This document shows positions 16,069 through 64,000 of a DNA stretch of 64,000 nt, in pieces. Source of the DNA: Octopus sinensis (taxonomy: Eukaryota). Position 1 is the first letter of the stretch. Every line of letters begins with the position of its first letter. The stretch spans positions 10,974,001 to 11,038,000 of the forward strand of contig NC_043023.1 in the NCBI RefSeq assembly GCF_006345805.1, written 5' to 3'. A program made the position numbers and the translations under genes. The notes below the pieces were generated by a model, which did not search any database, was not told the origin of the DNA, and saw only the letters and a program-made list of their open reading frames with translations.

Positions 16069-16180
16069 TATATACTGTTTATATATGTGTATACACCATT
16101 TTTCTCTATCCCTTTCTCATTATGTGGTAAATGAGGAATTTGGGTTTAAGAACCCCCCATATAACCCCTCATTACTGAAA

Positions 16181-16579: not shown

Positions 16580-17613
<1,034 letters not shown>

Positions 17614-40543: not shown

Positions 40544-42208
40544 GGATGTTTTCGGTTTGAACGGCAGTTTTTTAAAATAATTTCCACGTAACTAAACACT
40601 TTTAAACTTTGTATACTGGTAGAATGTGTTTATAAAATATCTTTTTCTCTTGGCTTTATTGAGAAAATTCTATAGTTTGTAAGATATTTTGGATCTTTTC
40701 GGTTTGAACGGCAGTTTTTAAAAATAATTTCCACGTAACTAAACACTTTTAAACTTTGTATACTGGTAGAATGTGCTTATAAAACATCTTTTTCTCTTGG
40801 CTTTATTGAGAAAATTCTATAGTTTGTTAGATATTTGGGACCTTTTCGGTTTGAAAGGCAGTTTTTAAAAATAATTTCCACGTAACTAAACACTTTTAAA
40901 CTTCTTATACTGGTAGAATGTGTTTATAAAACATCTTTTTCTCTTGGCTTTATTGAGAAAATTCTATAGTTTGTAAGATATTTGTGACCTTTTCGGTTTG
41001 AAAGGCAGTTTTTAAAAATAATTTCCACGTAACTAAATACTTTTAAACTGTGTATACTGGTAGAATGTGTTTATAAAACATCTTTTTCTCTTGGCTTTAT
41101 TGAGAAAATTCTATAGTTTGTTAGATATTTGGGATCTTTTCGGTTTGACCGGCAGTTTTTTAAAATAATTTCCTTGTAACTAAAAAATTTTAAACTTCGT
41201 ATACTGGTAGAATGTGTTTATAAAACATCTTTTTCTCTTGGCTTTATTGAGAAAATTCTATAGTTTGTAAGATATTTCGTCTTTAATTTCTTGCATTTCG
41301 GCAATTTTAACCAATCACTGACCGTCCATTGAGGTGAAAGCATTCTGTGTGTCATCAATATGTCCTTCGTTTAAGAAACAGATTGGGTTTATTTACATTT
41401 GTGATGAAAAAAAGATACCCTTCCCCCACCCCTAACTCTAAATCTAAAATAGAATGAAATGCAATAGATCGATACTAGCATCATAATTATGGGTGACATT
41501 TTCATTTGACACCGCTACAAAAAACTCCCATTTTCCCTAGCGGTGTCGTATGAAATTGTCACCCATAATTGTAACCCTAGTATCAATCTATTGCATTTCA
41601 ATCTGTTTTAGGGTTAGGGGTGGGGGAAGGGTATCTTTTTTCATCACAAATGTAAATAAACCCAATCTGTTTCTTAAACGAGGGACATATTCATACGGCA
41701 CAGAATGTTTTCACCTCAAATAGACATCATTGATTGGTTGAAATTGCAGAAATGGAAGAAAAAAAACAACAAATATCTTACAAACTATAGAATTTTCTCA
41801 ATAAAGCCAAGAGAAAAAGATGTATTATAAACACATTCTACCAGTATACGAAGTTTAAAAGTGTTTAGTTACGTGGAAATTATTTTAAAAAACTGCCGAT
41901 CAAACCGAAAAGATCCCAAATATCTTACAAACCATAGAATTTTCTCAATAAAGCCAAGAGAAAAAGATGTTTTATAAACACATTCTACCAGTATACGAAG
42001 TTTAAAAGTGTTTAGTTACGTGGAAATTATTTTAAAAAACTGCCGATCAAACCGAAAAGATCCCAAATATCTTACAAACTATAGAATTTTCTCAATAAAG
42101 CCAAGAGAAAAAGATGTTTTATAAACACGTTCTACCAGTATATGAAGTTTAAAATTTTTTTGTTACCTAGAAATTATGTTAAAAACTGCCGGTCAAACCG
42201 AAAACGTC
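40544..42208. mobile_element. Foldback composite of Merlin-like MITE (inverted dimer with reiterated ~146-bp ends)
   Basis: 5 forward terminal units, a palindromic core centred near 41530, then 3 reverse units; TSD TCCATGTT / TCAATGTT. Confidence 0.82.
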
Positions 42209-45373: not shown

Positions 45374-45524
45374 ATAAATATAAGAGAGTGGTCAATATGT
45401 GGCTCACTCTGGCACTAGAAATAGATCCAATAGGTTTCAGCCACAAAATAAATTTATTTTGTGGCTGAAACCTATTGGATCTATTTCTAGTGCCAGAGTG
45501 AGCCACATATTGACCACTCTCTTA

Positions 45525-45531
<7 letters not shown>
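45374..45531. repeat. Perfect 158-bp spacerless palindrome
   Basis: Centre AAAATAAA|TTTATTTT at 45452/45453; the 79-bp arms are exact reverse complements. Confidence 0.92.
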
Positions 45532-45584
<53 letters not shown>

Positions 45585-45585
<1 letters not shown>

Positions 45586-45791
45586 TCTTTTTACTCTTTT
45601 ACTTGTTTCAGTAATTTGACTGCGGCCATGCTGGAGCACCGCCTTTAATCGAGCAACTCAACCCCAGGGACTTATTCTTTTGTAAGCCCAGTACTTATTC
45701 TATCGGTCTCTTTTGCCGAACCGCTAAATAATGGGGTCATAAACACACCAGCATCGGTTGTCAAGCAATGCTAGGTGGACAAACACACACA

Positions 45792-45845
<54 letters not shown>

Positions 45846-45852
45846 TATATAT

Positions 45853-45937
<85 letters not shown>

Positions 45938-46110
45938 TATATACATATATACGACAGGCTTCTTTCAGTTTCCGTCTACCAAATCCACTCAAGGCTTTGG
46001 TTGGCCTGAGGCTATAGTAGAAGACACTAGCCCAAGGTGCCACACAGTGGGACTGAACCCAGAACCATGTGGTTGGTAAACAAGCTACTTACCACACAGC
46101 CACTCCTGCG
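45585..46110 (-). mobile_element. SINE family A with expanded internal microsatellite
   Basis: Matches 12415-12820. Confidence 0.85.
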
Positions 46111-46522
46111 CCTCTATATATATCTTTTATCTTTTACTTGTTTAAATCATTTGACTGGAGCACTGCCTTTTTTAGTCGAAAAAGAAATCATCTGCAAGAT
46201 TTATTTTTGTGAGCCTGGTACTTATGTTTCTGTGGCCGAACTGATAAGTTATGGGGATGTAAATATATCAACACCGGGTATCATGCGGTTGTGGGGAGAC
46301 AAACACACACACACTTCTTTTCAATCTCTGGCTACCAAATAAACTCACAAGACTTTGGTTGGGTGGAGGCTATAGTAGAAAACACTAGCACAAGGTGCCA
46401 TGCAGTGGGACTGAACCTGGAACTATGTGGTTAGGATGCAATCTTCTTACCAGTCTACCACGTCTACACCTACAATATATGTATATAAGTGTTTGTGTTT
46501 AATTTTTATTCCCATCATCACG

Positions 46523-47043: not shown

Positions 47044-47269
47044 GAGTGTAGAAATTCGGGGTGAGTACTTGATAATTATAAGCACCTGTGTATACCGTTT
47101 GGTGGTGTAGGTGGTGGAGTAAATTGATCAAAATAAAAATAAAAATAAAAACATGAGGCGAAGGATTCAGCGGTACATATGTTTCGGCAGCAGCATCGAA
47201 TTGAATCGTCCATCTCTTTCTTCTCTCAATGTAGAAATATATATATATATATATATATATACTCTTTCT

Positions 47270-47473
47270 CTCTCTCTTTACTCTTTTACTTGTTTCAGCC
47301 ATTTGACTGTGGCCATGCTGGAGCACCGCCTTTAGTCGAGCAAATCGACCCCGAGACTTATTCTTTGTAAGCCCAGTACTTATTCTATTGGTCTGTTTTG
47401 CCGAACCGCTAAGTGACGGGGACGTAAACACACCACCATCGGTTGTCAAGCAATGCTAGGGGGACAAACACAA

Positions 47474-47504
<31 letters not shown>

Positions 47505-47620
47505 CATATATATATGACAGGCTTCCTTCAGTTTCCGTCTATCAAATCCACTCACAAGGCATTGGTTGGCCCAGGGCTATAGTAGAAGACACTTGCCCAA
47601 GATGCCACGCAGCCACTCCT
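47270..47620 (-). mobile_element. SINE family A
   Basis: Matches 12415-12820. Confidence 0.8.
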
Positions 47621-47843: not shown

Positions 47844-48454
47844 GAAAAAATATATATATATATGTGTGTGTGTGTGTATGTGTATGTATGTATGCATATA
47901 TATATATATATATGCATACATACATACACATACACACACATATATATATTTTTTCATTTATATATATATATATACATACACACACACACACACATATATA
48001 CATATGCATACACCCACACACACACACACACACATTTGCTGAGTGATGGAACAAAAATAGTAGTGATGTTGGAGATGGCATATCCACAAAAGAAAAGTGA
48101 GTGTAGAAATGAATAGGAGATGGGGGGGGTGATGGTGAAGGAATCTCTTATCCATACAGAGTGTATAATTGTTAGTCGATTTACAATCGTTAAATTATAT
48201 ACACACGACAACATATCCACACATGGGAAGGCACTACAGCATACATGCACTTATATCTAAACAAAGCCACACATACACATATACGTGAGGAGGTAATGCC
48301 CACTTCTTCCTGCTATGTTATAAATACCACGACAGTTGCGAGAGTGTCGCATTCTATTCGTCTTTCAACGAACTGATCTCACGCGACAGAAAGACTTACG
48401 GCCGAACATTCAAACCAAGTCACTGAATCGGGTAAATATTGCGATAATTATTTT

Positions 48455-48865
48455 CTTTAACTCTTTTACTTGTTTCAGTCATTTGACTGCGGCCATGCTG
48501 GAACACCGCCTTTAGTCGAGCAAATCGACCCCGGGACTTATTCTTTGTTAGCCCAGTACTTATTCTATCGGTCTCTTTTGCCGAACCGCTAAGTGACGGG
48601 GACGTAAACACACCAGCATCGGTTGTCAAGCAATGCTGGGGGGACAAACACAGACACACAAATACACACACATACACACATGTACATATATATACATATA
48701 TACGACAGGCTTCTTTCAGTTTCCGTCTACCAAATCCACTCACAAGGCATTGTTCGGCCCGGGGCTATAGCAGAAGACACTTGCCCAAGATGCCACACAG
48801 TGGGACTGAACCCGGAACAATGTGGTTGGTTAGCAAGCTACTTACCACACAGCCACTCCTGCGCC
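48455..48865 (-). mobile_element. SINE family A, full length
   Basis: Matches 12415-12820. Confidence 0.85.
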
Positions 48866-49221
48866 TTAACAAGCATTTTACTAACACATTATTTTTATTA
48901 TTATTGCTATTAATGTGATGAGCCGGCAGAATCGTTACTGTGCTAGACAGAACCCTTTGCATGATTTCTTCCAAGTTTACATTCTGAGTTCAAATTCCAC
49001 CGAGGTTGACTTTGCCTTTCGGGGTCGAAAGGATGAAAGTTGCGTACTAGTGTCGATGTAATCAACTGGGCCCCTCCCCCAAATTTCAGGCCGTGTGCCT
49101 AGAATAGAAAAAATTATTATTATTATTATCATTATTATTATTATTATCATCATTATCATTATTGTTATTATTATTGTTATTATTAGTATTATTATTATTA
49201 TTGTTGTTATTATTATTATTC

Positions 49222-50599: not shown

Positions 50600-51853
50600 G
50601 GATCTTTTCCTTTTGAACGGCAGTTTTCAACACAATTTCTAGTTAACTAATCACTTTTAAACTTCGTATACTGGGTAGAATGTGTCAATTTCATATGACA
50701 CCACTACGGAAAATGGGATTTTTTTCTAGCAGTGTCAAATGAAATTGTCACCCATAATTATAACCCTAGTATCGATCTATTGCATTTCAATCTATTTTAG
50801 GGTTAGGTTTAGAGTTATGGTTAGAGGTGGGGGAAGGGTATCTTTTTTCTTCGCAAATGTAAATAAACCCAATCTGTTTCTTAAATGCGGGACATATTCA
50901 TATGGCACAGAATGTTGTTTACGTCAATGGAGGTCAGCGATTGGTTAAAATTGCCGAAATGCTCAAAATTAAAGTCGAAATATCTTACAAACTATAGAAT
51001 TTTCTCAAGAAAGCCAAGAGAAAAAGATGTTTTATAAACACATTCTACCAGTATACGAAGCTTAAAAGTGTTTAGTTACAAGGAAATTATTTTTAAAAAC
51101 TGCCGTTCAAACCGAAAAGACCCAAATATCTTACAAACTATAGAATTTTCTCAATAAAGTCAAGAGAAAAAGATGTTTTATAAACACATTCTACCAGTAT
51201 ACGAAGTTTAAAAGTGTTTAGTTACATGGAAATTATTTTAAAAAACTGCCGTTCAAACCGAAAAGACCCAAATATCTTACAAACTATAGAGTTTTCTCAA
51301 TAAAGCCAAGAGAAAAAGATATTTTATAAACACATTCTACCAGTATACGAAGTTTAAAAGTGTTTAGTTACGTGGAAATTATTTTTAAAAAACTGCCATT
51401 CAAACCGAAAAGACCCAAATATCTTACAAACTATAGAATTTTCTCAATAAAGCCAAGAAAAAATGATGTTTTATGAACACATTCTACCAGTATACGAAGT
51501 TTAAAAGTGTTTAGTTACATGGAAATTATTTTAAAAAACTGCTGTTCAAACCGAAAAGACCCAAATATCTTACAAACTATACAATTTTCTCAATAAAGCC
51601 AAGAGAAAAAGATATTTTATAAACACATTCTACCAGTATACGAAGTTTAAAAGTGTTTAGTTACGTGGAAATTATTTTAAAAAACTGCCGTTCAAACCGA
51701 AAAGACCCAAATATCTTACAAACTATAGAATTTTCTCAATAAAGCCAAGAGAAAAAGATGTTTTATAAACACATTCTACCAGTATACGAAGTTTAAAAGT
51801 GTTTAGTTAACTAGAAATTGTGTTGAAAACTGCCGGTTAAACGGAAAAGATCC
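50600..51853. mobile_element. Merlin-like MITE with about 6 tandem 145-bp terminal units, 8-bp TSD
   Basis: TSD GACTCATC at 50592-50599 and 51854-51861; each unit ends in the TIR sequence. Confidence 0.85.
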
Positions 51854-51954: not shown

Positions 51955-52403
51955 CATCATCATCATCATCATCATCAGTTAACGTCCGCTTTCCATGCTA
52001 GCATGGGTTGGACGGTTCAACTGGGGTCTGGGGAGCCCGAAGGCTGCACCAGGCCAGTCAGATCTGGCAGTGTTTCTACAGCTGGATGCCCTTCCTAACG
52101 CCAACCACTCCATGAGTGTAGTGGGTGATTTTATGTGCCACCGACACAGGTGCCAGACGAGGCTGGCGAACGGCCACGCTCGGATGGTGTTTTTATGTGC
52201 CACCGACACAGGTGCCAGACAAGGCTAGCAGACGACCACGCTCGGATGGTGTTTTTATGTGCCACCGACACAGGTGCCAGACGAAGCTGGCGAACGGCCA
52301 TGCTCGGATGGTGTTTTTATGTGCCACCGACACAGGTGCCAGACAAGGCTAGCAGACGACCACGCTCGGATGGTGTTTTATGTGCCACCGACACAGGTGC
52401 CAG
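51955..52403 (-). mobile_element. RTE LINE 3' end with about 4.5 UTR repeat units
   Basis: (CAT)n tail and reverse-complement UTR units. Confidence 0.85.
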
Positions 52404-52637
52404 ATTATATTAAACCTCATCTTTTGATAAGATTTACAATTCAATAAATGTTGCATGGGATAACTGTGCGGACTATACTGAAATGGCAAGAGGTTGACAG
52501 CATTTTTTAGGTTAATAACTGTTTCATCTACAGCTTTATTGATGGCTCTTAATCAAGGTAAAATATGATGGAAAATAAGCCATCCATGACTGTCACATCA
52601 GTCCCACTACATATAATCATTAGTAATACTTATAGTC

Positions 52638-52988
52638 TTACTCTTTTACTTGTTTCAGTCATTTGACTGCGGCCATGCTGGAGCACTGCCTTTAGTCGAG
52701 CAAATCGACCCCTGGACTTATTCTTTGTAAGCCTAGTACTTATTCTATTGGTCTCTTTTGCCGAACTGCTAAGTTTACTCTTTTACTTGTTTCAGTCATT
52801 TGACTGAGGCCATGCTGGAGCACCGCCTTTAGTCGAGCAAATCGACCCGAGGACTTATTCTTTGTAAGCCCAGGACTTATTCCATTGGTCTCTTTCGCCG
52901 AACTGCTAAGTTACAGGGACGTAAACACACCAGCATCGGTTGTCAAGTGATGTTGGGGGGACAAATACAGACACAAACATATACACAC

Positions 52989-53067
<79 letters not shown>

Positions 53068-53232
53068 TACGACAGGCTTCTTTCAGTTTCCGTCTACCAA
53101 ATCCACTCACAAGGCTTTGGTCGGCCCGAGGCTATAGCAGGAGACACTTGCCCAAAATGCCATGCAGTGGGACTGAACCCAGAACCATGTTGTTGGTTAG
53201 CAAGCTACTTTCCACACATCTACTCCTGTGCC
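52638..53232 (-). mobile_element. SINE family A with duplicated ~137-bp 3' end
   Basis: About 52638-52775 is repeated at about 52776-52915. Confidence 0.8.
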
Positions 53233-53277
53233 TACAAAACTTTTCACCATCACTTATCAGATAATAATGTATTTATA

Positions 53278-53640: not shown

Positions 53641-54544
53641 AAATGAACTTTCTTATCTTCCATTTTAAAGGGTTACAGAATTAACACAAGTTATAGGAAC
53701 ATAAACCTTTTCCCACGAAAAGATAGCTTAAACTGTGCTCTAAATGGAGGTGTAGTCAAATCCTATTTTATGGATTCAACCATGTTCTAAAATAAATCAA
53801 AAGGTAAGCTACTATAAATTGGCATGAGCTTTCCAGACAACCCAATATCTTCAAGTCTTATTTCTAGTGATTATTATATGGAAAACAATTTGTCTAATGT
53901 AAAGTATACTAGCCATCTCAGTATGGCTAACCACTGAGGGTGGGTGTTACTGTAGCTTTTAGCCCCAGGAGATCATCGTCTCCAGCTGGCTTTAGGCACA
54001 CTTTCTGTGCCCTAATGATATTTGCAAAGGGAGGTCATCCCTCTCTCGTCAACCTAAGTGATACGCATGGACTGCAGTTTCTAGGTATTTGCCTCTTGTC
54101 AACGTACGGTAATCACCAGTTTTCGATGAAAGGGGGACCTGTTTGCAAATATTTAATGTTTTACCGAGTAACCTCTGTCACTGATTTCGAAAAACTGTCT
54201 GCAAGCAATAATAAATCTCTGAACGAGATGTAAACAGTAACCGCTCAACAACGTAAAGTATACTAGCCATCTCAATATGGCTAACCACTAAGGGTGGGTG
54301 TTACTGTAGCTTTATATTTGTCTAATATATTTAATGAAATGTGTGTTTTCAGTGAAATTGTTTGAAAAATGAAGTAAATATTTTATCAAAAACTTTTCAT
54401 GAAACTAATAAATTTTTCTTTTTTAATTTCAGCTTTGGCTTAAAGGGTAGTGAATTGTGAAGACAAATTTTATTCTGAATCAATGAACAAAATTTAGAGA
54501 ATAAATAAATATTTGATAGAGAGAGATAATTCTATATTCGTAAA

Positions 54545-57500
54545 ATGGAGAAGATTAATGAAGAAAACAAAATGTTGGCTCTCACTCTTGTTGCAGACAG
54601 TGATGCAACACTAATTCATAAGGAAACTATACCAATTCTTCCCCGAATATTACATACACAAAACACAAAGAAAACTGAAGGACGGAAAACACAATACACA
54701 ATGACAATTGAAAAACAGGAAATGTCCATATTACCAAATTTTCTTCATATTGTGACATGTTACCTAACAATTATCAAAACAGACCACATCAATACGTTTA
54801 TAGATTTTGTAAAGGATAAATGTAATAACATAGAGTCTATGGGTTTAGACGGATCCTTTATCTTATGTAATATCAAGCATAAAATGCAAAAGTTTCTGGA
54901 ATTTACCAAACAGTATAATGATTTTGTCCACCAAAATCTCGAATGGTTTCAACAAAGACTCTTTGACATTTATGTCACATGTAACCCATACAGCCACAAG
55001 TTTGTTGGGGCACCAAAAATAACAACAAAATTTCGACCACTTTGTCAGATCGTGACACGAGAAGCAAAGATCAATGAATCTCGTAAAGACTCAGGCAACA
55101 ACACAATATCTAATATTGTTATCATACAAACGGGAATAGTAACGTATTCCCATCACTGTATGACAATATCTTGTATCACAAAAGATGGTGACAGAAATGA
55201 TGTTCATTGCCCATCTCCTGTCACCGATTTTACCAGGATCGCTCAAGACACTGTATTGGCCACCCTCCCCTTTAAACAAATGATTCTTATTATCAATTCC
55301 GTAAGCTTTATAATCAAAACACTTCCATTGGGTTTCTATAAAGTTTCTTACGTAGAACTTTCTACATTTATAGGTGTAGAAATGTTCAGTAAAACCATCT
55401 ACCTTGTGGACTGGGTTGATAATAAAATTGTAAGTCAATTCCTAGCCAAAGAGGTACCTACGGATATTGCTGTAGGTGCAGGAAATAAATTACTGTTATC
55501 ATTTCCCAGTATTAGCAGAGTTACCTGTTACAATCTGGCTGGCCTGCAGTTGTTTGAGGTAGAGACACATTATCTGAACTTAGTAATGCAAGTCACGCTG
55601 TACCAAAACCATTTTTATGTCCTCCAAGGACATATCATTTATAGGATTTCAACCACAGGCGGTGTGACCATGAGAGACATTGGCATGAAATGCCGTTCTG
55701 TTTCTGTTTGTAGAGATGCCATTTTTGTAACAGATGATTTTGGTGTACCTCATATGGTTACAACAAATAAAGACTTTTGGCCCAGGCTGTCATATAACCA
55801 TCAGCGGTGTTCCCCCAGTTTGAGCAACCATTTTTATATAGAAGATTGCTACAACATTACAAATATTCTACCTATGGCAACATCTTCTACATTAATAATC
55901 TACAGGAATAAGAAAGCTTTAGTATTCACTGATACTGGAGAAATAATTAGCAAAAATAATTTAACTTTCCTTGAGTTTCCTTCTGTTTTATGTAGAATAA
56001 ACTCAAACAGATTCCTGGTCTTTTATCGTGAAATGAAAGGACTTCAGTATATCACCTATCCTGAACTAACCGAAGGCCCTTTAATAAAGGTCCACACTAA
56101 TTACATTACCATATGTCATATTGTATTAAATAAGTTTTTAGCTCTGACCACCAGTGGAAACAAACATGAGGTACATATCCTATTGATCAAAGAGGACAAA
56201 GTTAACGTGATAGAAAGAATTTCTCTTGGACATTTTAATGTCACCATTGCTGCAACTCCAGTTAATTTTGTTGTCGTAGATGGAAGGGAAAACAAACTGA
56301 TATTTTATTTGACATCTGGTGAAGAACTTTTTGAAAAATACCTTCCATTCTATGGTTCCTCTTATTTCATCTACTCTGATAATATTTATTTTTATGTCCT
56401 GTTCAAGAGACACTCTATTGTGATATGTTATGATATATATGGAGACATTAGATGGCAGTGGAAACTGCCTTTCCCTGTTCACCCTGACATTGCTGTTTTT
56501 CAGGGGACTATTTATGTGCTGGATACTGAACTCAACAGGGTTCTTCTTTACAAGAATCATGACCGGTCGTCTGGCTGTTTTTTACACTTGAAAAATCCTT
56601 ATATCAGAAATCTAAATATACGACTCAAAGAAAAAGGGAATGTCAAACTTCTCATTGCCGAAATATGTCATCTGTCCAATGGGCAGTTGGTGGTGTCTGA
56701 CATCAACCATGATTGCTTGTTATACATTTCTAATGAAGGAGACATTGTGTCTAGATTATCTCTGCCGTCTACAGCTACAGATATATGTCGATGGAACCCT
56801 AATCAAATAGGTGTCATCTTACCCCTAGAGAAACAATTAAGGATTATCGAAAACCTATCAGAGACAGTTAGAACTGTATCATTAAGCCAGCCTTATGTAC
56901 GGGTGTGCAAGCTGGGCAAAGATAAAATTGCTTGTTATTCTGATAAACCATCTCATTTAGATATTTTAGCCATTAAAAATTATAATCAAGTTGAAATAAT
57001 TCATAGGATTAATATCACTTTTGTAGTGAAATCGTTAGCAATAGAAAATGAAACTCAAAAACTATTAATTGTTACTAGAGGAAAGGCTTTTCAGTACAAC
57101 ACTAGTTTCGGTGATGGTTGTCATAGCAGTGGTGATCGTCTTTGTAGTATTAAGATGGTCCCCAGGGTTTTACTGTCCCAAGTGAAATGCCCTCCCAATT
57201 TCTATGCTGGGTCTATTGATAAAACTTTTGTCTATCTGATAGACAACAGCCGTATGTTTGCTATAAACGATTATAATTTGATGGTTAATGATCTCATTAC
57301 AAATAATCAACTTAATATTTATATCGACCTGGTAGATGTATTTTCCAGAAACATTTGTGTCAGTGAAATGTTATCTTCTACATTATATCTACAGGATCTG
57401 ACAGTTTCTGATAAGGCTAGACACATTCCTCTTTCTCAGAGTTTCGGAGACGAACAACCGATGAGGATTCATTGTCTGGTTATTACTGAAAATAACCTGA

Positions 57501-58858
57501 TTGCAGGATATGACTGGCAAAATAAAAACATTAAGATATTCACGTTTGATGGTCAAGTTCTGGATTCTGTCAAATGGAATGCTTTTGGCTTTCTCAAAAT
57601 GTGTCGATGGCAGTCAAACACATTGGTTATTACGGACGGTGATTGCATTGATAATAAATACCAACTGTTGACATTAAAAGTGGAATTTCCATTGTCGTTG
57701 GTAATTTATCAGACAGAAAATAGATATGACTGTATCACTTCTTTATCAAACAATCAACTGGTGTGTAGTAAATGGAGAGATTTATATAGTGTCTATGTTG
57801 TTGAAATCGATGAAATACATTCGACTTTGAATGAAATAAAACAAATAGCCATACCTGAAACATTATCACCAAGAAACGAACTTGGTAATAGAAATTTTAT
57901 CACTGATATACATGATATTACAGTTACTGCTGAAGATATCATCATTGTCTTAAACAAAAGATTCATCATTTTCTTCAACCGTGATGGTCAGTATCTACAT
58001 TCAGTTAGACACTACATAAAGTATGTCGGTCATAATGACATGATGACAGTTGATGACAGTTTATTGTACATTCAAGCAGCATGGGATAAATGTTCTAGTT
58101 ACTTTGGATATAGAAGCATTGTGTGTTTGACACAGGCTGGGGAATACAGCGGAATACTTTTAAATAAAAGAATTCATCGAGCTAAACTAAGTTACCCCAG
58201 TATAAACTGTAAGGGACCAAGGTTTGTTGGAAGCTACTACCCAAGGAATGAATTGTATGTTCAAGGTCTGTTTATTGTTAATCGAGAAAGCTTTTCTGTT
58301 GCTCGTTTACAAACAGACGAATGTCCTGTTGAAGTAAAAGATTTTGATATCTCTGATGAAGGGAAGATAGTTGTGTGTGAAAAAGCCAATAATGGAAATG
58401 TTAAAATATTTTATGAAAGCGGGGAGTTGCTATGTCACAGAAATATTGCAAGTTTAGTTGGTGGTGTGTGTTTTACAGAAGAAAGAGACATAATGACCAC
58501 AGTTTCTAAAACACAAGAAATATTTCAACTGAATCGAAAAGATTTGGAGAAATTTAAAGTTTGGCAAAGTCAAGTACCTTATGGTGTAATATGGAGAAAA
58601 GTGGGAAATATTTACTGGTGTGTACATATTGAATTAACTGAATGTCATTGCATAAAGATTGATGGGGACCAAGTGAACATTCTGGAATCTGTGTCGTTAT
58701 TAAATCTTGATTCTGGTCTTCATTTCTCTTCCATTACATCTCAGATGAACAAGGAAATATTCAGTAATGAATTAATTAATAAGTTGAATTACAGTGCAGG
58801 ATTTGTCAGAGGTGGAAGAAGTGGTAAAACAGGTAAAAAAATTGTAAAAGTAGATTAA
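54545..58858 (+). CDS. 1437-aa protein of tandem beta-propeller-like (NHL/TolB-like) modules
   Basis: 4.3-kb stop-free frame in AT-rich DNA with blade-like motifs (PTDIAVGAGNKLLLS; IAEICHLSNGQLVVSDINHDCLLYISNEGDIVSRLSLPSTATDICRW; VKDFDISDEGKIVVCE). Acceptor TTTTAATTTCAG at 54421-54432 precedes the ATG. Confidence 0.85.
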   Translation: MEKINEENKMLALTLVADSDATLIHKETIPILPRILHTQNTKKTEGRKTQYTMTIEKQEMSILPNFLHIVTCYLTIIKTDHINTFIDFVKDKCNNIESMGLDGSFILCNIKHKMQKFLEFTKQYNDFVHQNLEWFQQRLFDIYVTCNPYSHKFVGAPKITTKFRPLCQIVTREAKINESRKDSGNNTISNIVIIQTGIVTYSHHCMTISCITKDGDRNDVHCPSPVTDFTRIAQDTVLATLPFKQMILIINSVSFIIKTLPLGFYKVSYVELSTFIGVEMFSKTIYLVDWVDNKIVSQFLAKEVPTDIAVGAGNKLLLSFPSISRVTCYNLAGLQLFEVETHYLNLVMQVTLYQNHFYVLQGHIIYRISTTGGVTMRDIGMKCRSVSVCRDAIFVTDDFGVPHMVTTNKDFWPRLSYNHQRCSPSLSNHFYIEDCYNITNILPMATSSTLIIYRNKKALVFTDTGEIISKNNLTFLEFPSVLCRINSNRFLVFYREMKGLQYITYPELTEGPLIKVHTNYITICHIVLNKFLALTTSGNKHEVHILLIKEDKVNVIERISLGHFNVTIAATPVNFVVVDGRENKLIFYLTSGEELFEKYLPFYGSSYFIYSDNIYFYVLFKRHSIVICYDIYGDIRWQWKLPFPVHPDIAVFQGTIYVLDTELNRVLLYKNHDRSSGCFLHLKNPYIRNLNIRLKEKGNVKLLIAEICHLSNGQLVVSDINHDCLLYISNEGDIVSRLSLPSTATDICRWNPNQIGVILPLEKQLRIIENLSETVRTVSLSQPYVRVCKLGKDKIACYSDKPSHLDILAIKNYNQVEIIHRINITFVVKSLAIENETQKLLIVTRGKAFQYNTSFGDGCHSSGDRLCSIKMVPRVLLSQVKCPPNFYAGSIDKTFVYLIDNSRMFAINDYNLMVNDLITNNQLNIYIDLVDVFSRNICVSEMLSSTLYLQDLTVSDKARHIPLSQSFGDEQPMRIHCLVITENNLIAGYDWQNKNIKIFTFDGQVLDSVKWNAFGFLKMCRWQSNTLVITDGDCIDNKYQLLTLKVEFPLSLVIYQTENRYDCITSLSNNQLVCSKWRDLYSVYVVEIDEIHSTLNEIKQIAIPETLSPRNELGNRNFITDIHDITVTAEDIIIVLNKRFIIFFNRDGQYLHSVRHYIKYVGHNDMMTVDDSLLYIQAAWDKCSSYFGYRSIVCLTQAGEYSGILLNKRIHRAKLSYPSINCKGPRFVGSYYPRNELYVQGLFIVNRESFSVARLQTDECPVEVKDFDISDEGKIVVCEKANNGNVKIFYESGELLCHRNIASLVGGVCFTEERDIMTTVSKTQEIFQLNRKDLEKFKVWQSQVPYGVIWRKVGNIYWCVHIELTECHCIKIDGDQVNILESVSLLNLDSGLHFSSITSQMNKEIFSNELINKLNYSAGFVRGGRSGKTGKKIVKVD

Positions 58859-58860
58859 AG

Positions 58861-59940
58861 GTGAGATGTGGTAATTACATAGCGGAGAGTATGTTAGGAA
58901 TTGATGAAATATCAGTGAGGCAACTGCCATATAGAACAGCAATGGTCCCTCTTTCCATTCCTACATTCGATGAACCTGTTAATTATAATTTTATAGACAT
59001 TAAGGACCGGAACAGTAAGCTAATTAAGTTAGATAACGATGTCAGTGTGTTGATGTTTAGAGAAACTCTCACGTTAATCAGTGCAACAGGTGACATACTC
59101 CAACATAAACAACTGCCACAACAACAACCACATCTGGACATATGTCAGTGGAAAGATGAACAGTTCATAGTTGTCTTTGGTAAAGAAATGATGGTCTTCA
59201 ACAGAAATCTCTGTCGTTTAAAAACCATCAAAACAGAGAAATACTATAACACAATTTATAAATACAATGATAATCAAATTGTGTGTGGTGGTCATTATAT
59301 TGGAGATATAACTCAAAACGAGAGAAACAAGAATTACGAAAAAGAAATCTACAACAACAGATTTTATTACTTCTGCAAAGACCCCGATGCCTGCGACTCT
59401 TATTATGTGGATGTAGTTGATATCAATGATGGGGAAATCAAATATGAAGTGTGTCGTGGGAAGACGAAGGTGTTGGGAAAATTAGAGGGAGAGGCAGTCG
59501 TGTTTGATGTAGGAGTCACAACTTTTGGTGATGTTATTGTTGTGAGGAGGGAGACGAAAAAGATGGAGTTGGGAAGGTGGGCTGATTTATGTTTTGTTGA
59601 ATGGTACAGAGAAAAGTCGTTGGTCAGAAGGATAGCGCTAGAAGGAAAATATTACGTCGGAGATAATATTCACAGACCTCGTCTAATCGCAGTTGGTAAA
59701 AATGTTTATATAAGAGACAGAAAAAACAGTATTTATCAAATACCTGGACATATTGAACAAGAAACATCTGAAGATTCTGAAGATCTGACATTAAAAGATA
59801 TTAAAAAATATTCACTCCTTAAGCAGGGTGATAATGAGGTCTTCCACGTTCTTGGTTTTGATATTTCAGAAAATTCTTTCATGGTTTTTGGAATTATTCC
59901 AGGACGTCAATCTTTTGCTTTCTTTTTTTATGACAAATAA
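58861..59940 (+). CDS. 359-codon ORF, probable C-terminal continuation (sixth propeller-like module) of the 54545 ORF
   Basis: Starts 2 nt after the upstream stop, in the -1 frame, and is open from 58837. Contains LTLISATGDILQHKQLP...LDICQWKDEQFIVVF, similar to the upstream modules. AATAAA at 59936-59941. Confidence 0.75.
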   Translation: MRCGNYIAESMLGIDEISVRQLPYRTAMVPLSIPTFDEPVNYNFIDIKDRNSKLIKLDNDVSVLMFRETLTLISATGDILQHKQLPQQQPHLDICQWKDEQFIVVFGKEMMVFNRNLCRLKTIKTEKYYNTIYKYNDNQIVCGGHYIGDITQNERNKNYEKEIYNNRFYYFCKDPDACDSYYVDVVDINDGEIKYEVCRGKTKVLGKLEGEAVVFDVGVTTFGDVIVVRRETKKMELGRWADLCFVEWYREKSLVRRIALEGKYYVGDNIHRPRLIAVGKNVYIRDRKNSIYQIPGHIEQETSEDSEDLTLKDIKKYSLLKQGDNEVFHVLGFDISENSFMVFGIIPGRQSFAFFFYDK

Positions 59941-60179
59941 ATATTTTCATAAATATTAGACTTTGATGTTGTTAACATTATTATTTAATTGGATTAATCC
60001 AGGAATTGAACCTGCATCCCTTACGTTGCATTGTACACATTAACACTTATTCTTGTAACATACTTCAACATGCACACAATCTCTCTATATAAATTTGTAT
60101 ACAATATTTGGTACATGTATATATAAAGTAATGAAAATACCCCTTCGTATGTATGTATATATGTGTGTGTGTGTATACT

Positions 60180-60548
60180 CTCTTTACTCTTTTACTTGTT
60201 TCAGTCATTCGACTGTGGCCATGCTGGAGCACCACATTTAGTCGAGCAAATTGACCCCGGGACTTATTCGTTGTAAACCTAGAACTTATTCTATCGATCT
60301 CTTTTGCTGAACCGCTAAGTGACGGGGAGGTAACCAAACCGACATCGGTTATCAAGCAATGTTGGGGTGTGGGGGGCAAACACAGACACAATCATAAACA
60401 CACACATACATACATACATATATATGCAACGGGTTTCTTTCAGTTTCCGTCTACCAAATCCACTCACAAGGCATTGGTTGGCCCGAGGCTATAGTAGAAG
60501 ACACTTGCCCAAGTTGCCACGCAGTGGGACTGAACCCGGAACCATGTG
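60180..60548 (-). mobile_element. SINE family A
   Basis: Matches 12415-12820. Confidence 0.8.
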
Positions 60549-61039
60549 GTATCTTTTTTTCTTCAGAAATGTAAATAAACCCAATCTGTTTCTTAAACGA
60601 AGGACATATTCATACGGCACAGAATGTTTTCACCTCAATAGACGTCATTGATTGGTTGAAATTGCAGAAAAAGAACAACAAATATCTTACAAACTATAGA
60701 ATTTTCTCAAGAAAACCAAGAGAAAAAGATGTTTTATAAACACATTCTACCAGTATACGAAGTTTTAAAGTGTTTAGTTACGTGGAAATTATTTTTAAAA
60801 ACTGCCGGTCAAACCGAAAAGATCTGAATGTTTTCACCTCAATAGACGTCATTGATTGGTTGAAATTGCAGAAATTGAAGAAAAAACAACAACAAATAGC
60901 TTACAAACCATAGAATTTTCTCAATAAAGCCAAGAGAAAAAGGTGTTTTATAAACACATTCTACCAGTATACGAAGTTTAAAAGTGTTTAGTTACGTGGA
61001 AATTATTTTAAAAAACTGCCGGTCAAACCGAAAAGATCC
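60549..61039. mobile_element. Partial Merlin-like MITE with duplicated end
   Basis: Two copies of the terminal region ending CCGAAAAGATC. Confidence 0.75.
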
Positions 61040-62489
61040 TTCGTTTGCTTCTAGCAAATGAAAAGAAACTTGAAAAACTTGCACCGAATATATTTAATTA
61101 TGGATATTCGTTGAATGTGACTGTCAGGGTATCGGTAGAGTTAAATATCGCCTTTCGGTGAATTACGTTAGGGATTTTTAACTTACTACACCGGTCTATA
61201 TTCAGATGCCTGCTTGGTTTCCACTTAATTAATTCAGCTAATCTAATGATTTTTACGTATAATAATTGTTTATTGTTAAGGTAAACGTTAATGTTTGTGG
61301 ATAAAATATAGCGAGTTACTTATTTCGAAGTCAATGATCCACCCACTTCGTCGTTTTTAATAATTCCCGCAAACAAAATCGTTAATTGGCTTTTTTAATT
61401 GGATTTTTTTACACAAGACCAGGACAGAGGAAAAAGGATTTTCATCTCAGCAAATGAGTAAATAACTTCTCTGAACTTCCTTGATTTTTCAGTTGATCGT
61501 CAAATCAAAAAGAAAAAGAAAATATAATAGAACGCATGGACCTTTGTTTTAATCGTACTGTGCAGTTTCTTGATCTGTTAGTAACACACACACACACACA
61601 CTCACACATCACCTATTAGTTAGTCATCTACATGTGTACCTATGCACATTTTATTTTTCACCTTACACTGTCGTAATAATAATGTAGAAAATGTAATTCT
61701 GTTCGTCAACAAAAACATATGTGTGGAATTTGGAGAAAAAAAAATTACATTGCATAATTTCCGTATTTGTAAGCCGAAACTGATATTCTCGACAAAAAGG
61801 TAAACCGTATATTTACTCAAGACCAGGACAGAGAAGGACCCATTTTAATTACCAACGAATGAGGGAATAGGTTTCCTGATCCTGCTTGACTTTTCTGTTG
61901 ATTGTCAATTCAAAAAAACAAAACAAAAGAAATACAACAGAACACACGGACTTTTCTTTCATCCGCAGTGCACAGTATAAATTCATACATACACGCATAC
62001 TAAGGCACACATATATACATATCAGTTATTAGGCATCTACATGTGTTCATATACACATTTTCTTTCATCTTACACTGCCGTATTGATAATGCAGAAATTA
62101 TAAGTCTTTTCGCCTACAAGAATATATTTTTGTATGGAAATTGGAAAGGACTGAACAAAACTCTTGTGGTCAGTAAAAAATATATCATTCCCACACTTGT
62201 GAACCGAAATCTACGAGTCACGACTAAAAGTTGAACCATTTGAGATAATACTTGACATTTCTCAGATTTTTGTCTCAGATTCCTGAAGAATTGATATGGA
62301 AGACGTAATGATAATGTAGAAAATGTAACAAAAATATATGTGTGGAATTTGGAAAAAAAAAATATACATTGCATAATTTCCACACTTGTAAACCGAAACA
62401 GATAATATTCTCGACAAAAAGCTAAACCGTAAGAAATAATTCTTTAAAACATTTCTCAGATTTTTGTCTCAGATTCCTGAAGAATTGAT

Positions 62490-64000
62490 ATGGAAGACGT
62501 TAAGGACTTGGACACTTCTACCACAACTGATTTTACCGATGTAGATTCAGCAACATCGATAGAGAGAGACGAGAAACCTTTATGGAGTGAACTATTTATT
62601 AATCAAGCATCGATAATTGGAACTATTCCAAAATATTGCTGTGAGATTTGTGGGAAAACCTTCGATTCTGAACAGGATTTCTTCACGCATAAAGACGCAC
62701 ACAATAAGGACAAACCATTCCATTGTGAAATATGTGGGAAATATTTTGCATATAACAGTTATTTCATAAGTCATCAACGAATCCATACAGGGGAAAAGCC
62801 GTATCATTGCGAGATATGTGAGAAGTCTTTCACTCAGAATTCTCACCTTGTTATCCACATACGTAGCCATACGGGGGAGAAACTATTTCGCTGTGAGATA
62901 TGTGATAAATCCTTTGTTTCCAACAGCAATTTAACAAAACATAGGCGAATCCACACGGGGGAAAAACCGTATCATTGTGAAATCTGCTTCAAGTCTTTCG
63001 TCTCAAATTGTAAATTAACCAGACACAAGCGGATTCATACGGGCGAAAGACCGTACCATTGTGAAACGTGCGGTGAATCTTTCATCTGTAGTAGTGTTTT
63101 AAACAGACATAAACGGATCCACACGGATGCCAAGCTTTTTCAGTGTGAAATCTGTGAGAAAACCTTCTTTGATCATGCTAATCTTGTCATTCACGAACGG
63201 ATCCATTCCGGAGAGAAGCCGTTTGCCTGTGAAATCTGCGGAAAAGCATTCATTACTAATTCTAAGGTTACGATCCACAAACGGAGTCACACTGGGGAGA
63301 AACTGTTCCCCTGTGAAATCTGTTGGAAGTCTTTTGTCTCTAATAATGTCTTGACGAAACACAAACGAATTCATACTGGAGAAAAGAACTTCCATTGTGA
63401 AGTGTGTGCGAAAGCGTTTGGTACTAACAGTGATTTAATCAGACACCGACGAATCCACACGGGGGAGAAACCATACCACTGTGACATCTGTGGGAAATCC
63501 TTTACTCAGAATTCTTGCCTTGTTATTCACACTCGTAGCCATTCGGGATTGAAACCGTATCACTGTGAAGTGTGCGGGAAATCTTTTGTTGATAATAGTA
63601 ATCTAAACAGACACAGACAAACACATGCTAAAGAGAAAGCTTTTAACTTTAAAACTGTGGTAGAGGCTAAGCCTTTTAACCATGACACTTCGGCAGAAGC
63701 TAAGGTTTTTATCTATGGAACTTCAGCAGAACCTGAGCCTTTTAACCATGAAACTTCGGTAGAAGCTAAGGCTTTTAACTGTGAAACTTCGGTAGAGGCT
63801 AAGCCTTTTAACTCTGAAACTGTGGTAGAAGCTAAGCCTTTTAACTATAAAACTTCAGTAGAAGCTAAGGCTTTTAACCGTGAAACTTTGGAAGTGGCAA
63901 AGCCTTCAAAATGTGAAACTTCGGTAGAGGCTAAGCCTTTAAACTGTGAAACTTTGGAAGAGGCTAAACCTTCAAACTGTGAAACTTTGGAAGAGGCTAA
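62490..64000 (+). CDS. C2H2 zinc-finger protein (12 fingers plus 11-aa repeat tail), 3' partial
   Basis: Acceptor TTTTTGTCTCAG at 62461-62472 and ATG at 62490 (MEDVKDLD). 12 CxxC-x12-HxxxH fingers at about 62634-63626. No stop before the window end, which is why it is absent from the ORF track. Confidence 0.92.

What the first reader, a model, noticed from the sequence alone, without database searches (positions are those of the whole stretch)
54545..59940. Giant protein built from about six tandem beta-propeller-like modules with no recognisable RING/B-box
Seen: similar blade-1/2 motifs start at about 55100, 55850, 56650, 57460, 58325 and 59010, a spacing of 230-290 codons that continues across the ORF break. 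Established: this motif pattern resembles the six-bladed NHL/TolB-like propeller usually found as one copy at the C-terminus of mollusc TRIM-like proteins. Inference: a multi-propeller receptor or scaffold of about 1800 aa, encoded in one long exon with highly diverged modules and a ~180-aa N-terminal region of unknown type, possibly for immune recognition.
Basis: partly seen in the sequence, partly recalled or inferred. Interest (0 to 1): 0.8.

Follow-up and report, generated by a model that had tools for sequence, protein, structure and literature searches.

The report
Octopus protein of six tandem NHL propellers
This 5.4-kb intronless octopus gene, broken here by a one-base frameshift, belongs to an uncharacterised octopod-only family of ~1,800-residue proteins made of six tandem NHL-type beta-propeller modules copied from the propeller of TRIM-NHL ubiquitin ligases, without the ligase part.

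Summary
ORF1 (54545-58858) and ORF2 (58861-59940) are one gene split by a single missing T at 58842-58843. About 35 relatives read straight through that point, and restoring the base gives 1,798 aa. A profile of cephalopod RING-B-box-NHL proteins, which are themselves clear TRIM2/3/71 relatives, hits exactly these six regions at 82-99.5% probability; shuffled controls give 0.2% or less. Four modules match the whole six-bladed template. Modules 3 and 5 match only its first half and are followed by conserved segments of unknown type. AlphaFold predicts all-beta blocks and Foldseek returns multi-propeller proteins. There is no RING, B-box, signal peptide or transmembrane segment. The N-terminus is disordered plus about 80 helical residues with no detectable relatives. 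Full-length relatives occur only in octopods (Octopus species and Argonauta), in dozens of single-exon copies. dN/dS is about 0.55, and two deep lineages are conserved at 91-94% between species. The function has not been tested. I infer a non-catalytic, multivalent binding scaffold. This copy may be a young pseudogene, because the O. vulgaris counterpart carries two different frameshifts.

The parts
54545..54742 (+). Start codon and disordered, poorly conserved N-terminal tail (aa 1-66). There is an in-frame stop 15 nt upstream of the ATG.
   Evidence: pLDDT is 21-36. Family column conservation is about 0.5. The upstream frame is closed. Paralogues start with the same MEKINEENK or with an alternative MEDQTEN-type N-terminus.
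54743..54979 (+). Helical region (aa 67-145, three predicted helices) of unknown type. It may be an oligomerisation element.
   Evidence: AlphaFold predicts helices at 67-94, 104-123 and 127-145 with low confidence. hhalign finds no homology to the B-box/coiled-coil part of cephalopod TRIM-NHL proteins (probability 0.25%). Pfam finds no domain.
54980..55078 (+). Linker (aa 146-178) carrying the conserved NPYxHK...KFRPL motif.
   Evidence: K152, I154, K162, F163 and R164 are invariant or nearly invariant across 41 sequences. AlphaFold predicts it as disordered.
55079..55816 (+). Module 1 (aa 179-424), a complete NHL-type propeller.
   Evidence: hhalign to the TRIM-NHL propeller profile covers template columns 19-267 at 93.7%. 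AlphaFold predicts 23 strands at aa 190-406 with pLDDT 75-89.
55817..56590 (+). Module 2 (aa 425-682), a complete NHL-type propeller.
   Evidence: hhalign gives 94.9% for aa 455-728. AlphaFold predicts 23 strands at aa 425-670. It is an internal repeat with module 1 (offset 260) and module 3 (offset 267).
56591..57424 (+). Module 3 (aa 683-960). The first half is NHL-type and is the most conserved stretch of the family. The second half (aa 826-960) is conserved but of unknown type.
   Evidence: hhalign gives 96.4%, but only to template columns 7-152. Aa 826-965 have no similarity to NHL or to the other modules. Conservation is 0.84-0.89 at aa 691-810. AlphaFold predicts 17 strands at aa 690-851 and is low-confidence at 856-957.
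57425..58324 (+). Module 4 (aa 961-1260), a complete NHL-type propeller and the one closest to TRIM-NHL proteins.
   Evidence: hhalign gives 99.5%, E=8.4e-23, over template columns 20-276. In the exhaustive profile search, the C-terminal propellers of the TRIM-like proteins align here, at profile positions 880-1121. AlphaFold predicts 24 strands at aa 959-1240.
58325..58950 (+). Module 5 (aa 1261-1469). The first half is NHL-type. The second half is a conserved helical or low-confidence segment that contains the frameshift.
   Evidence: hhalign gives 81.7% to template columns 28-174. AlphaFold predicts 12 strands at aa 1262-1384, then helices and low pLDDT at 1387-1460. Aa 1385-1475 resemble nothing else.
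58842..58843 (+). Frameshift site. The window has TT after an A7 run where the O. vulgaris counterpart has TTT. ORF1 therefore ends at the TAA at 58856-58858.
   Evidence: Pairwise alignment with L003 shows the missing base. P0002 reads GKKICKSRLKVRCGNY. About 35 family members are continuous across this point. A 65-nt GT..AG mini-intron was considered and rejected, because the stretch it would remove is conserved coding sequence in the paralogues.
58951..59940 (+). Module 6 (fused aa 1470-1798), a complete NHL-type propeller with insertions, followed by the stop codon. An AATAAA overlaps the stop.
   Evidence: hhalign gives 97.1% over template columns 14-276. AlphaFold predicts 28 strands at aa 1439-1797. 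The C-terminal ...MVFGIIPGRQSFAFF.YDK is shared by the family. The sequence was read directly.
54316..60125 (+). Duplication unit shared with paralogue L001 (P0004). It is the ORF plus 229 nt upstream and 185 nt downstream, at 80.6% identity.
   Evidence: blastn of the window against L001. The closer pair L001/L002 shares 6.35 kb plus collinear flanks.

Best explanation
The locus is one copy of an octopod-restricted family of single-exon genes. Each encodes a ~1,800-aa soluble, probably intracellular protein.

The protein has a disordered tail, an ~80-aa helical region and a conserved linker. These are followed by six tandem modules descended from the six-bladed NHL beta-propeller at the C-terminus of cephalopod TRIM-NHL (RING-B-box-coiled-coil-NHL) E3 ligases.

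Four modules (1, 2, 4, 6) are complete propellers. Modules 3 and 5 keep only the first half of the template, and each is followed by a conserved segment of unknown fold. The RING, B-box and TRIM coiled coil are absent, so the protein cannot act as a ligase itself.

Shown:
- gene structure
- the six modules
- homology of the modules to NHL propellers
- the missing domains
- the taxonomic range
- the coding constraint on the family

Inferred:
- The protein works as a non-catalytic, multivalent binding platform. Each propeller face would bind a ligand (RNA or protein, as in Brat, TRIM71 or TRIM2/3).
- Module 3 (invariant) and module 1 (lowest dN/dS) would hold a conserved partner, while modules 2 and 4-6 (dN/dS 0.6-0.96) diversify between paralogues.
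- The helical region may oligomerise.

The window copy carries a one-base frameshift at aa 1433. If the shift is real, it removes module 6.
For: Gene and frame:
- ORFs.
- Junction.
- Fused length 1,798 aa.
- Single-exon paralogues.

Modules:
- Internal repeats up to 95.5%.
- Six hits of an external TRIM-NHL propeller profile at 81.7-99.5% with the next hit at 16%.
- Controls at 0.2% or less.

Link to the NHL family:
- The family profile searched against PDB sequences returns TRIM71, Brat, TRIM3, TRIM2 and Thin as its top 11 hits. All are weak; the best is E=9.5e-4.
- The exhaustive search puts cephalopod RING/B-box/NHL proteins next after the family, at E 7.6e-14 to 3e-8.
- The profile of that TRIM-like group hits TRIM3 at 5e-33, TRIM2 at 1.5e-30, TRIM71 at 2e-29 and Brat at 2e-18.

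Fold:
- AlphaFold predicts all-beta blocks of 23, 23, 17, 24, 12 and 28 strands. Mean pLDDT is 62 and 73 for the two halves.
- Foldseek finds more than 1,000 propeller hits with E<1e-3. The best are multi-propeller proteins such as IFT-A subunits, DDB1 and LRP4.

Missing parts:
- Pfam finds no RING or B-box in the window protein or in seven relatives.
- No hydrophobic segment has a Kyte-Doolittle mean above 1.8, and there is no signal-like N-terminus.

Range and constraint:
- Full-length relatives come only from Octopus species and Argonauta hians.
- Intact 1,800-codon ORFs persist at dS about 0.3 with dN/dS 0.54-0.61.
- Two deep lineages are 91-94% identical between O. vulgaris and O. bimaculoides.
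Against: - The window protein does not reach Pfam's NHL threshold (8.4 bits against a cutoff of 20). NHL membership therefore rests on profile-profile comparison and transitive homology.
- Foldseek's best hits are WD40-type multi-propeller proteins at 8-11% identity, which shows the fold but not the class.
- Modules 3 and 5 do not match the second half of the template.
- No ligand, expression or localisation data were found.
- This locus has frame-breaking indels in both genomes compared, and dN/dS between them is 0.80. This copy may not make a full protein.
Confidence: 0.8

Rival explanations
1. The window copy is a young pseudogene of this family. The frameshift at 58842-58843 is real and the locus is decaying. 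This rival concerns the status of this copy, not the nature of the family.
For: The orthologous or allelic O. vulgaris locus (L003, 98.8% identical over 13 kb) has two different one-base indels, at aa 321 and aa 595, with 22 stops between them. The annotators spliced that stretch out. Between the two sequences there are 17.3 non-synonymous and 5.7 synonymous changes, giving dN/dS 0.80, which is close to neutral. Many database family members are fragments.
Against: At least two of the three indels lie in short homopolymer runs (T5/T4 and TT/TTT after A7), which is typical of long-read assembly errors. Apart from them, both sequences keep a full 1,798-codon frame with no stop. With only 23 substitutions, dN/dS 0.80 cannot be told apart from the family average of about 0.55.
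Confidence: 0.5
2. The ORF belongs to a mobile element, either as a transposon or virus-derived protein or as cargo, which would explain the many intronless copies.
For: The genome holds dozens of intronless copies. The gene sits between repeats, with same-orientation SINE-like copies at 52637-53236 and 60148-60550. Some gene models fuse family members to hAT-like or zinc-finger domains (P0028, P0014).
Against: - Pfam finds no transposase, reverse transcriptase, integrase or capsid domain.
- No terminal inverted or long terminal repeats bound the unit.
- The flanking SINE-like element is a dispersed family found all over the window and in the other loci.
- Paralogues share collinear flanks beyond the unit, as in segmental duplication.
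- About 23 of the protein clusters lie on one 29-Mb chromosome.
- Two lineages have conserved orthologues in three Octopus species.
- The nearest outgroup is a host TRIM-NHL gene.
Confidence: 0.04
3. The modules are propellers of another class (WD40, YWTD/LDL-receptor or TolB type), and the NHL-like motifs are convergent.
For: The best Pfam hit is the fourth propeller of WDR90 (E=0.004, far below its threshold). The top Foldseek hits are WD40-type and YWTD multi-propeller proteins.
Against: Every sequence-level signal points to NHL. The PDB sequence hits are exclusively TRIM-NHL. The TRIM-like NHL profile gives E=8e-23 to module 4 and hits all six modules. That profile matches TRIM2/3/71 at 1e-29 to 1e-33. 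No WD40 or Ldl_recept_b repeats, EGF domains or signal peptide were found.
Confidence: 0.04
4. It is a secreted or membrane-anchored pattern-recognition receptor, the literal form of the reader's 'receptor ... for immune recognition'.
For: The family has expanded in one lineage. dN/dS is elevated, up to 0.83-0.96 in modules 4 and 5. Arrays of extracellular propellers exist, as in LRP2 and LRP4.
Against: The N-terminus is charged and disordered and does not look like a signal peptide. No 19-aa window reaches transmembrane-like hydrophobicity; the maximum is 1.78, inside a beta strand. There are no EGF or other extracellular domains. The nearest relatives are cytoplasmic TRIM-NHL ligases. An intracellular sensing or restriction role is not excluded.
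Confidence: 0.06

Closest known systems
Cephalopod TRIM-like RING-B-box-coiled-coil-NHL proteins (for example Acanthosepion/Sepia pharaonis CAE1315789.1, 656 aa; Argonauta hians GAB1603402.1)
   Same: Their C-terminal six-bladed propeller is the closest relative of the modules. It matches module 4 at E=8e-23 and shares the motifs GICxW, VTLP and YDCIASLS..LVC.
   Different: They carry one propeller, not six. They also have the RING, B-box and coiled coil, all absent here.
Canonical TRIM-NHL proteins: TRIM2, TRIM3, TRIM71/LIN-41, Brat, Mei-P26, Thin
   Same: They share the NHL six-bladed propeller, linked by transitive homology: family to PDB at E about 1e-3, and the TRIM-like group to PDB at 1e-33. 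Their propeller face binds RNA or proteins (Brat: PMC4015489). This is the basis of the binding-platform inference.
   Different: They have a single propeller and are E3 ligases or translational repressors with a tripartite motif. They are conserved across animals, whereas this family is confined to octopods and evolves fast.
Multi-propeller scaffolds: DDB1/CPSF160/SF3B3 (three propellers), IFT-A WDR19/IFT140, EML-type proteins, UTP proteins
   Same: They place several propellers in one chain and act as non-catalytic platforms. They are the best Foldseek matches.
   Different: Their blades are WD40-like. Identity is 8-11% and there is no sequence relationship. They have two or three propellers rather than six.
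LDL-receptor family YWTD propeller arrays (LRP4 with four, LRP2 with eight)
   Same: They hold many six-bladed propellers in one polypeptide. Foldseek gives E about 1e-17.
   Different: They are extracellular, their propellers are separated by EGF modules, and they have a signal peptide and a transmembrane segment. None of these features is present here.
NHLRC2 and teneurin NHL domains
   Same: In these proteins an NHL propeller is used outside the TRIM context (one search lists both).
   Different: Each has a single propeller combined with a thioredoxin domain or a YD shell. Neither is a tandem array.

Membership tests
NHL-repeat beta-propeller (Pfam PF01436; TRIM-NHL type) | NHL repeats detected above the curated Pfam threshold | tested here: not met
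   The window protein scores 8.4 bits (E=3.1) against a cutoff of 20. Relative P0046 scores 18.5 bits. The repeats are too diverged for the 28-residue model.
NHL-repeat beta-propeller (Pfam PF01436; TRIM-NHL type) | Significant profile-level homology of each module to bona fide NHL propellers | tested here: met
   Six hits at 81.7-99.5%, the best at E=8.4e-23, with controls at 0.2% or less. The template group matches TRIM3, TRIM2 and TRIM71 at 5e-33 to 2e-29, and its member P0067 passes Pfam NHL at 29.1 bits. The top 11 direct hits to PDB sequences are all TRIM-NHL, with E from 9.5e-4.
NHL-repeat beta-propeller (Pfam PF01436; TRIM-NHL type) | Six-bladed, four-stranded propeller fold | tested here: inconclusive
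   AlphaFold predicts all-beta blocks of 23, 23 and 24 strands for modules 1, 2 and 4, about six blades each. It predicts 17, 12 and 28 strands for modules 3, 5 and 6. Foldseek confirms a propeller fold.
TRIM (tripartite motif) proteins | N-terminal RING finger | tested here: not met
   Pfam finds no RING in the window protein or in P0007, P0030, P0046, P0048, P0049 or P0088. The N-termini show no Cys/His pattern.
TRIM (tripartite motif) proteins | B-box zinc finger(s) | tested here: not met
   The scans listed for the RING row found no B-box. The TRIM-like outgroup proteins do have one.
TRIM (tripartite motif) proteins | Coiled coil preceding the C-terminal domain | tested here: inconclusive
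   Helices are predicted at aa 67-145 with low confidence. They show no homology to the TRIM-like N-terminal region (probability 0.25%).
WD40 / YWTD (LDL-receptor class B) propellers | WD40 or Ldl_recept_b repeats; for YWTD also EGF modules and a signal peptide | tested here: not met
   Pfam finds none. There is only a sub-threshold hit to the fourth propeller of WDR90, at 16.8 bits against a cutoff of 50. There is no signal peptide or transmembrane segment.
Transposable-element or viral protein | Transposase, reverse transcriptase, integrase or capsid domain, or terminal repeats bounding the unit | tested here: not met
   No such domain was found. No terminal inverted or long terminal repeats bound the unit. 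The duplicates share collinear flanks.

The most novel reading that the evidence does not exclude
Octopods evolved a RING-less 'hexa-NHL' protein class by six-fold internal duplication of a TRIM-NHL propeller. In this reading the class is a diversifying intracellular recognition system. An invariant module (module 3) would dock a conserved effector or partner. The fast-evolving modules 2 and 4-6, shuffled between paralogues by gene conversion, would recognise variable targets such as viral or transposon RNAs or capsids. Modules 3 and 5, which are half-propellers, might close into one composite propeller around module 4, giving a DDB1-like interleaved architecture.
Probability: 0.12. Interest if true: 0.8.

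Novelty: new variant of a known kind. Interest (0 to 1): 0.55.

Why it matters
NHL propellers are known as single C-terminal RNA- or protein-binding domains. A chain of six of them, detached from the E3-ligase machinery and amplified to dozens of fast-evolving intronless copies in a single animal order, is an architecture I found described in no paper of the searched library. The database entries are all 'uncharacterized' or 'hypothetical'.

It is a clear case of domain-level innovation in cephalopods and sits inside their expanded C2H2 zinc-finger gene clusters. It is also a candidate lineage-specific recognition or regulatory system. For structural biology it offers a natural array of four complete and two partial propellers.

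For annotation, it shows that several current Octopus gene models (P0002, P0014, P0028, P0063) are spliced or fused artefacts around frameshifts in this family.

Tried and rejected
- BLASTP self-comparison found no internal repeat. Profile methods were needed.
- Pfam on the window ORFs and on seven relatives gave nothing above threshold.
- I considered a 65-nt GT..AG mini-intron (58833..58897) that would also join the two frames. I rejected it because the stretch it would remove is conserved coding sequence in about 35 relatives.
- The N-terminal helical region compared with TRIM B-box/coiled-coil regions shows no homology.
- The second halves of modules 3 and 5 show no similarity to NHL or to the other modules.
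- tblastn of the protein against the rest of the window found no second copy.
- Searches for terminal repeats, a poly(A) tail or mobile-element hallmarks around the gene found only dispersed SINE-like copies and microsatellites.
- Four literature searches found nothing on this family. They covered octopus with NHL and family expansion, six LOC identifiers, cephalopod with tripartite motif and NHL, and tandem NHL propellers.
- Foldseek on the two multi-domain models returned only generic multi-propeller hits at 8-11% identity, so it could not assign the propeller class.
Full report
**1. What is in the sequence**

The + strand carries two long ORFs, 54545..58858 (1437 aa) and 58861..59940 (359 aa). 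Their length stands out in a repeat-rich eukaryotic window of 35-45% GC. The two ORFs are in different frames.

The Octopus vulgaris protein P0002 is about 99% identical and reads ...GKTGKKICKSRLKVRCGNY... across the junction. Alignment with its locus L003 (OX597842.1, 98.8% identical to the window over 13 kb) shows that the window has TT at 58842-58843 where L003 has TTT, just after an A7 run. About 35 family members are continuous here, with KGRLKVRCGNYIAE conserved.

The break is therefore a one-base frameshift. It is neither an intron nor a natural stop. A 65-nt GT..AG mini-intron that would also restore the frame is excluded, because it would remove conserved coding sequence. With one T restored, the product is 1,798 aa.

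**2. The six modules**

BLASTP sees no internal repeat. I aligned 46 relatives with the fused window protein and compared 120-aa slices of that alignment with the whole alignment using hhalign. Off-diagonal hits appear at offsets 260, 267, 271, 289, 513, 784 and 1051 aa, with probabilities up to 95.5% (E=1.4e-8). This defines a register at aa ~204, 455, 722, 993, 1282 and 1506.

An independent external probe gives the same answer. I built a 277-column profile from the C-terminal propellers of seven cephalopod TRIM-like proteins found in the exhaustive search. It hits six separate regions:

| Region (aa) | Probability | Note |
|---|---|---|
| 968-1290 | 99.5% | E=8.4e-23 |
| 1470-1795 | 97.1% | |
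| 683-825 | 96.4% | |
| 455-728 | 94.9% | |
| 179-400 | 93.7% | |
| 1264-1406 | 81.7% | |

The seventh hit drops to 15.9%. Reversed or column-shuffled versions of the probe never exceed 0.2%.

**3. Fold**

AlphaFold2 was run with the family alignment on aa 1-1000 (mean pLDDT 62) and on fused aa 940-1798 (mean pLDDT 73, pTM 0.67).
- Aa 1-66 are predicted disordered.
- Aa 67-145 form three low-confidence helices, followed by a disordered linker.
- After the linker come all-beta blocks of 23 strands (aa 190-406), 23 (425-670), 17 (690-851), 24 (959-1240), 12 (1262-1384) and 28 (1439-1797).
- Two low-confidence stretches interrupt the blocks, at aa 856-957 and 1387-1460.

Foldseek against the PDB gives more than 1,000 hits below E=1e-3 for each half. 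The best are multi-propeller proteins: IFT-A subunits, DDB1, axonemal EML-like proteins, UTP proteins and LRP4/LRP2. Identity is only 8-11%. This confirms propeller folds but not the class.

Modules 1, 2, 4 and 6 cover the whole six-bladed template. Modules 3 and 5 cover only its first half. The segments that follow them, aa 826-965 and 1385-1475, are well conserved in the family but resemble neither NHL blades nor any other module. 'Six modules' is right. 'Six complete six-bladed propellers' is not established.

**4. Propeller class and origin**

Pfam gives nothing above threshold: NHL scores 8.4 bits and the fourth propeller of WDR90 scores 16.8 bits. A family profile searched against all PDB sequences, however, returns only TRIM-NHL proteins as its top 11 hits. 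These are TRIM71 (E=9.5e-4), Brat, TRIM3, TRIM2 and Thin, matched on the classic 'hhhhD..N..I.hF...G' blade motif.

I then ran an exhaustive HMMER search of 1.84 billion representative proteins with a profile of aa 60-1229. It finds 44 proteins. The strong hits are family members. The next tier (E 7.6e-14 to 3e-8) consists of 550-860-aa cephalopod proteins with RING, B-box and a C-terminal NHL domain. They come from Acanthosepion pharaonis, Argonauta hians and unnamed read assemblies, and their propeller aligns to module 4.

The profile of that group matches TRIM3, TRIM2 and TRIM71 at 5e-33 to 2e-29. Its N-terminal part matches the B-box and coiled-coil regions of TRIM28, TRIM2 and TRIM3. These proteins are therefore genuine TRIM-NHL proteins.

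By this chain the six modules are NHL propellers. The most economical origin is internal amplification of a cephalopod TRIM-NHL propeller with loss of the tripartite motif. The N-terminal helical region shows no relationship to the TRIM N-terminus.

**5. The family**

The word-indexed search of 5.8 billion proteins found 47 clusters. All are annotated 'uncharacterized' or 'hypothetical', and all named ones come from Octopus vulgaris, O. sinensis or O. bimaculoides. One unnamed hit (P0047) comes from a read assembly. The typical full length is 1,780-1,800 aa. The exhaustive search adds Argonauta hians (1,913 and 1,925 aa) and nothing full-length outside octopods.

Paralogues P0003 and P0004 are single uninterrupted 5.4-kb CDSs. 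About 23 clusters lie on one 29.2-Mb O. vulgaris chromosome. The window's locus corresponds to a different chromosome, OX597842.1.

Homology between paralogous loci covers the ORF plus about 230-660 nt upstream and 185-285 nt downstream. In the closer pair it continues collinearly into the flanks. There is no poly(A) tail, no terminal repeats and no transposon domains. This is the pattern of segmental duplication, not of a mobile element.

dN/dS (Nei-Gojobori) between the window copy and P0004 or P0003 is 0.58 and 0.54 at dS about 0.31-0.33. Between P0004 and P0003 it is 0.61. The frames stay open over 1,800 codons at this divergence, so the family is coding and constrained, but loosely. By module:

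| Module | dN/dS |
|---|---|
| 1 | 0.34-0.37 |
| 2 | 0.60-0.65 |
| 3 | 0.41-0.43 |
| 4 | 0.65-0.83 |
| 5 | 0.67-0.96 |
| 6 | 0.60-0.65 |

The first half of module 3 is nearly invariant even in members only 32% identical overall. Two deep lineages have orthologues in three Octopus species. These are 91.3% and 93.9% identical between O. vulgaris and O. bimaculoides, although the lineages are only 42% and 32% identical to the window protein. So there are old, conserved members and a young, expanding subfamily. The window copy belongs to the latter.

**6. Status of this copy**

Within the gene, the window and L003 differ by 23 substitutions and three one-base indels. The indel at aa 1433 breaks the window copy. 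The other two, at aa 321 and 595, break L003, with 22 stops between them. The annotators hid that stretch as an 'intron', which produced the 1,472-aa model P0002.

Substitutions split 17.3 non-synonymous to 5.7 synonymous, giving dN/dS 0.80. Different lesions in two genomes and near-neutral change suggest a young pseudogene. On the other hand, at least two of the three indels sit in short homopolymer runs typical of long-read errors, and apart from them both sequences keep a full frame. The counts are also too small to tell 0.8 from 0.55. I put the pseudogene reading at about one half. Reads would settle it.

**7. How it most likely works**

Shown: the protein is soluble, with no signal peptide and no transmembrane segment. 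It has no catalytic or zinc-finger domain. It consists of a short helical region followed by six NHL-derived modules.

From established knowledge: NHL propellers bind ligands on one face. Brat and TRIM71 bind RNA (PMC4015489 for Brat). From my own knowledge, TRIM2, TRIM3 and TRIM32 bind proteins.

Inferred: the protein is a non-catalytic, multivalent binding platform. Conserved modules (3, 1) would hold a fixed partner, and variable modules (2, 4-6) would differ in specificity between paralogues. The helical region may oligomerise.

A defence or transposon-control role would fit the expansion, the fast evolution and the genomic neighbourhood, but it is not tested. A membrane-receptor role is unlikely.

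**8. Comparison, novelty and verdict**

The protein works like, and descends from, TRIM-NHL propellers, but it fails the TRIM membership test (no RING, no B-box). As a multi-propeller chain it resembles DDB1-type scaffolds and LRP arrays only in principle. I found no description of tandem NHL propeller arrays or of this family in the searched literature.

I class it as a new variant of a known kind. It is a real and well-supported architecture that is already in databases as unnamed predictions, and its function is unknown. Interest is moderate to good (0.55).

Noticed in passing
window 8260-9666 (-) and 62481-64000 (+, runs off the window): Two multi-finger C2H2 zinc-finger ORFs (469 aa with about 14 fingers; more than 506 aa with about 11 fingers) flank the region. 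The gene therefore lies inside one of the expanded octopus C2H2-ZNF clusters.
   Followed up: partly
window 3-1369 (-) and 36016-39157 (+): Broken ORFs look like non-LTR retrotransposon endonuclease and reverse-transcriptase fragments. They show motifs such as 'GIPQGTVLGPLLF' and a 'YRGIKLLD' type, and are split over several frames. I did not scan them against a library.
   Followed up: no
window 40544-41277, 41770-42204 and 50978-51850: A 146/147-bp satellite occurs in three arrays of 3-6 copies at 94-95% match. The first array is inverted relative to the other two. The same satellite is present in the O. vulgaris locus L003.
   Followed up: partly
window 52637-53236 and 60148-60550; also 45523-46474, 47237-47612, 48449-48866: An abundant SINE-like element of about 200-400 bp, ending in a CA/TA microsatellite, brackets the gene in the same orientation. 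It recurs many times in the window and in the paralogous loci. It accounts for the small 'ORFs' next to the gene.
   Followed up: partly
window 39373-39513, 39906-40265, 52124-52404 (also near 10451-11089): GC-rich tandem repeats of 62-67 bp give spurious ORFs with 'PPTQVPDEAGERPRSDG'-like periodic translations.
   Followed up: no
L003 10001-15397 (O. vulgaris OX597842.1), equivalent to window 55507 and 56328: The annotated O. vulgaris model P0002 (1,472 aa) removes aa ~298-623 as an 'intron'. In fact that stretch lies between two one-base indels (+A, -T) that throw it out of frame, producing 22 stops. This looks like an annotation artefact over a possible pseudogene.
   Followed up: yes
window 54545-59940 compared with L001 and L002: Synonymous divergence to the paralogues is very uneven along the gene: dS 0.57-0.75 in module 1 against 0.135-0.19 in module 5. 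Paralogues also carry one of two unrelated-looking N-terminal variants (MEKINEENK... or MEDQTEN...) on otherwise near-identical bodies. This suggests gene conversion or recombination among copies.
   Followed up: partly
P0063 / P0115 (O. vulgaris CAJ1099278.1 and CAJ1099277.1, 'MIB2-like'): The ankyrin-plus-RING gene model P0063, named MIB2-like, ends in a 128-aa stretch (aa 197-324) that matches the family's N-terminal helical region, linker and first blade at E=1e-28. P0115 is another model in the same 90% cluster with the same ankyrin and RING domains. It is either a chimeric gene model or an exonised family fragment. P0014 (zinc fingers) and P0028 (DUF4371) are similar fusions.
   Followed up: partly
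window 53896-53959 and 54250-54313: A 64-nt direct repeat (95% identical, 354 nt apart) ends exactly where homology to paralogue L001 begins (54316). The paralogue lacks the roughly 395 nt in between. It may be a local duplication or insertion in the promoter region.
   Followed up: no
window 16181-16280: A run of 100 N marks an assembly gap. The window 16001-18000 around it has the lowest GC of the window, 29%.
   Followed up: no
P0084 (Mytilus edulis CAG2220238.1, 423 aa): This is the only non-cephalopod animal hit that I identified in the exhaustive search (E=9e-4). It is a bivalve protein with one weak NHL repeat that aligns to the linker plus module 1. It is marginal and may simply be another NHL-like propeller.
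   Followed up: partly
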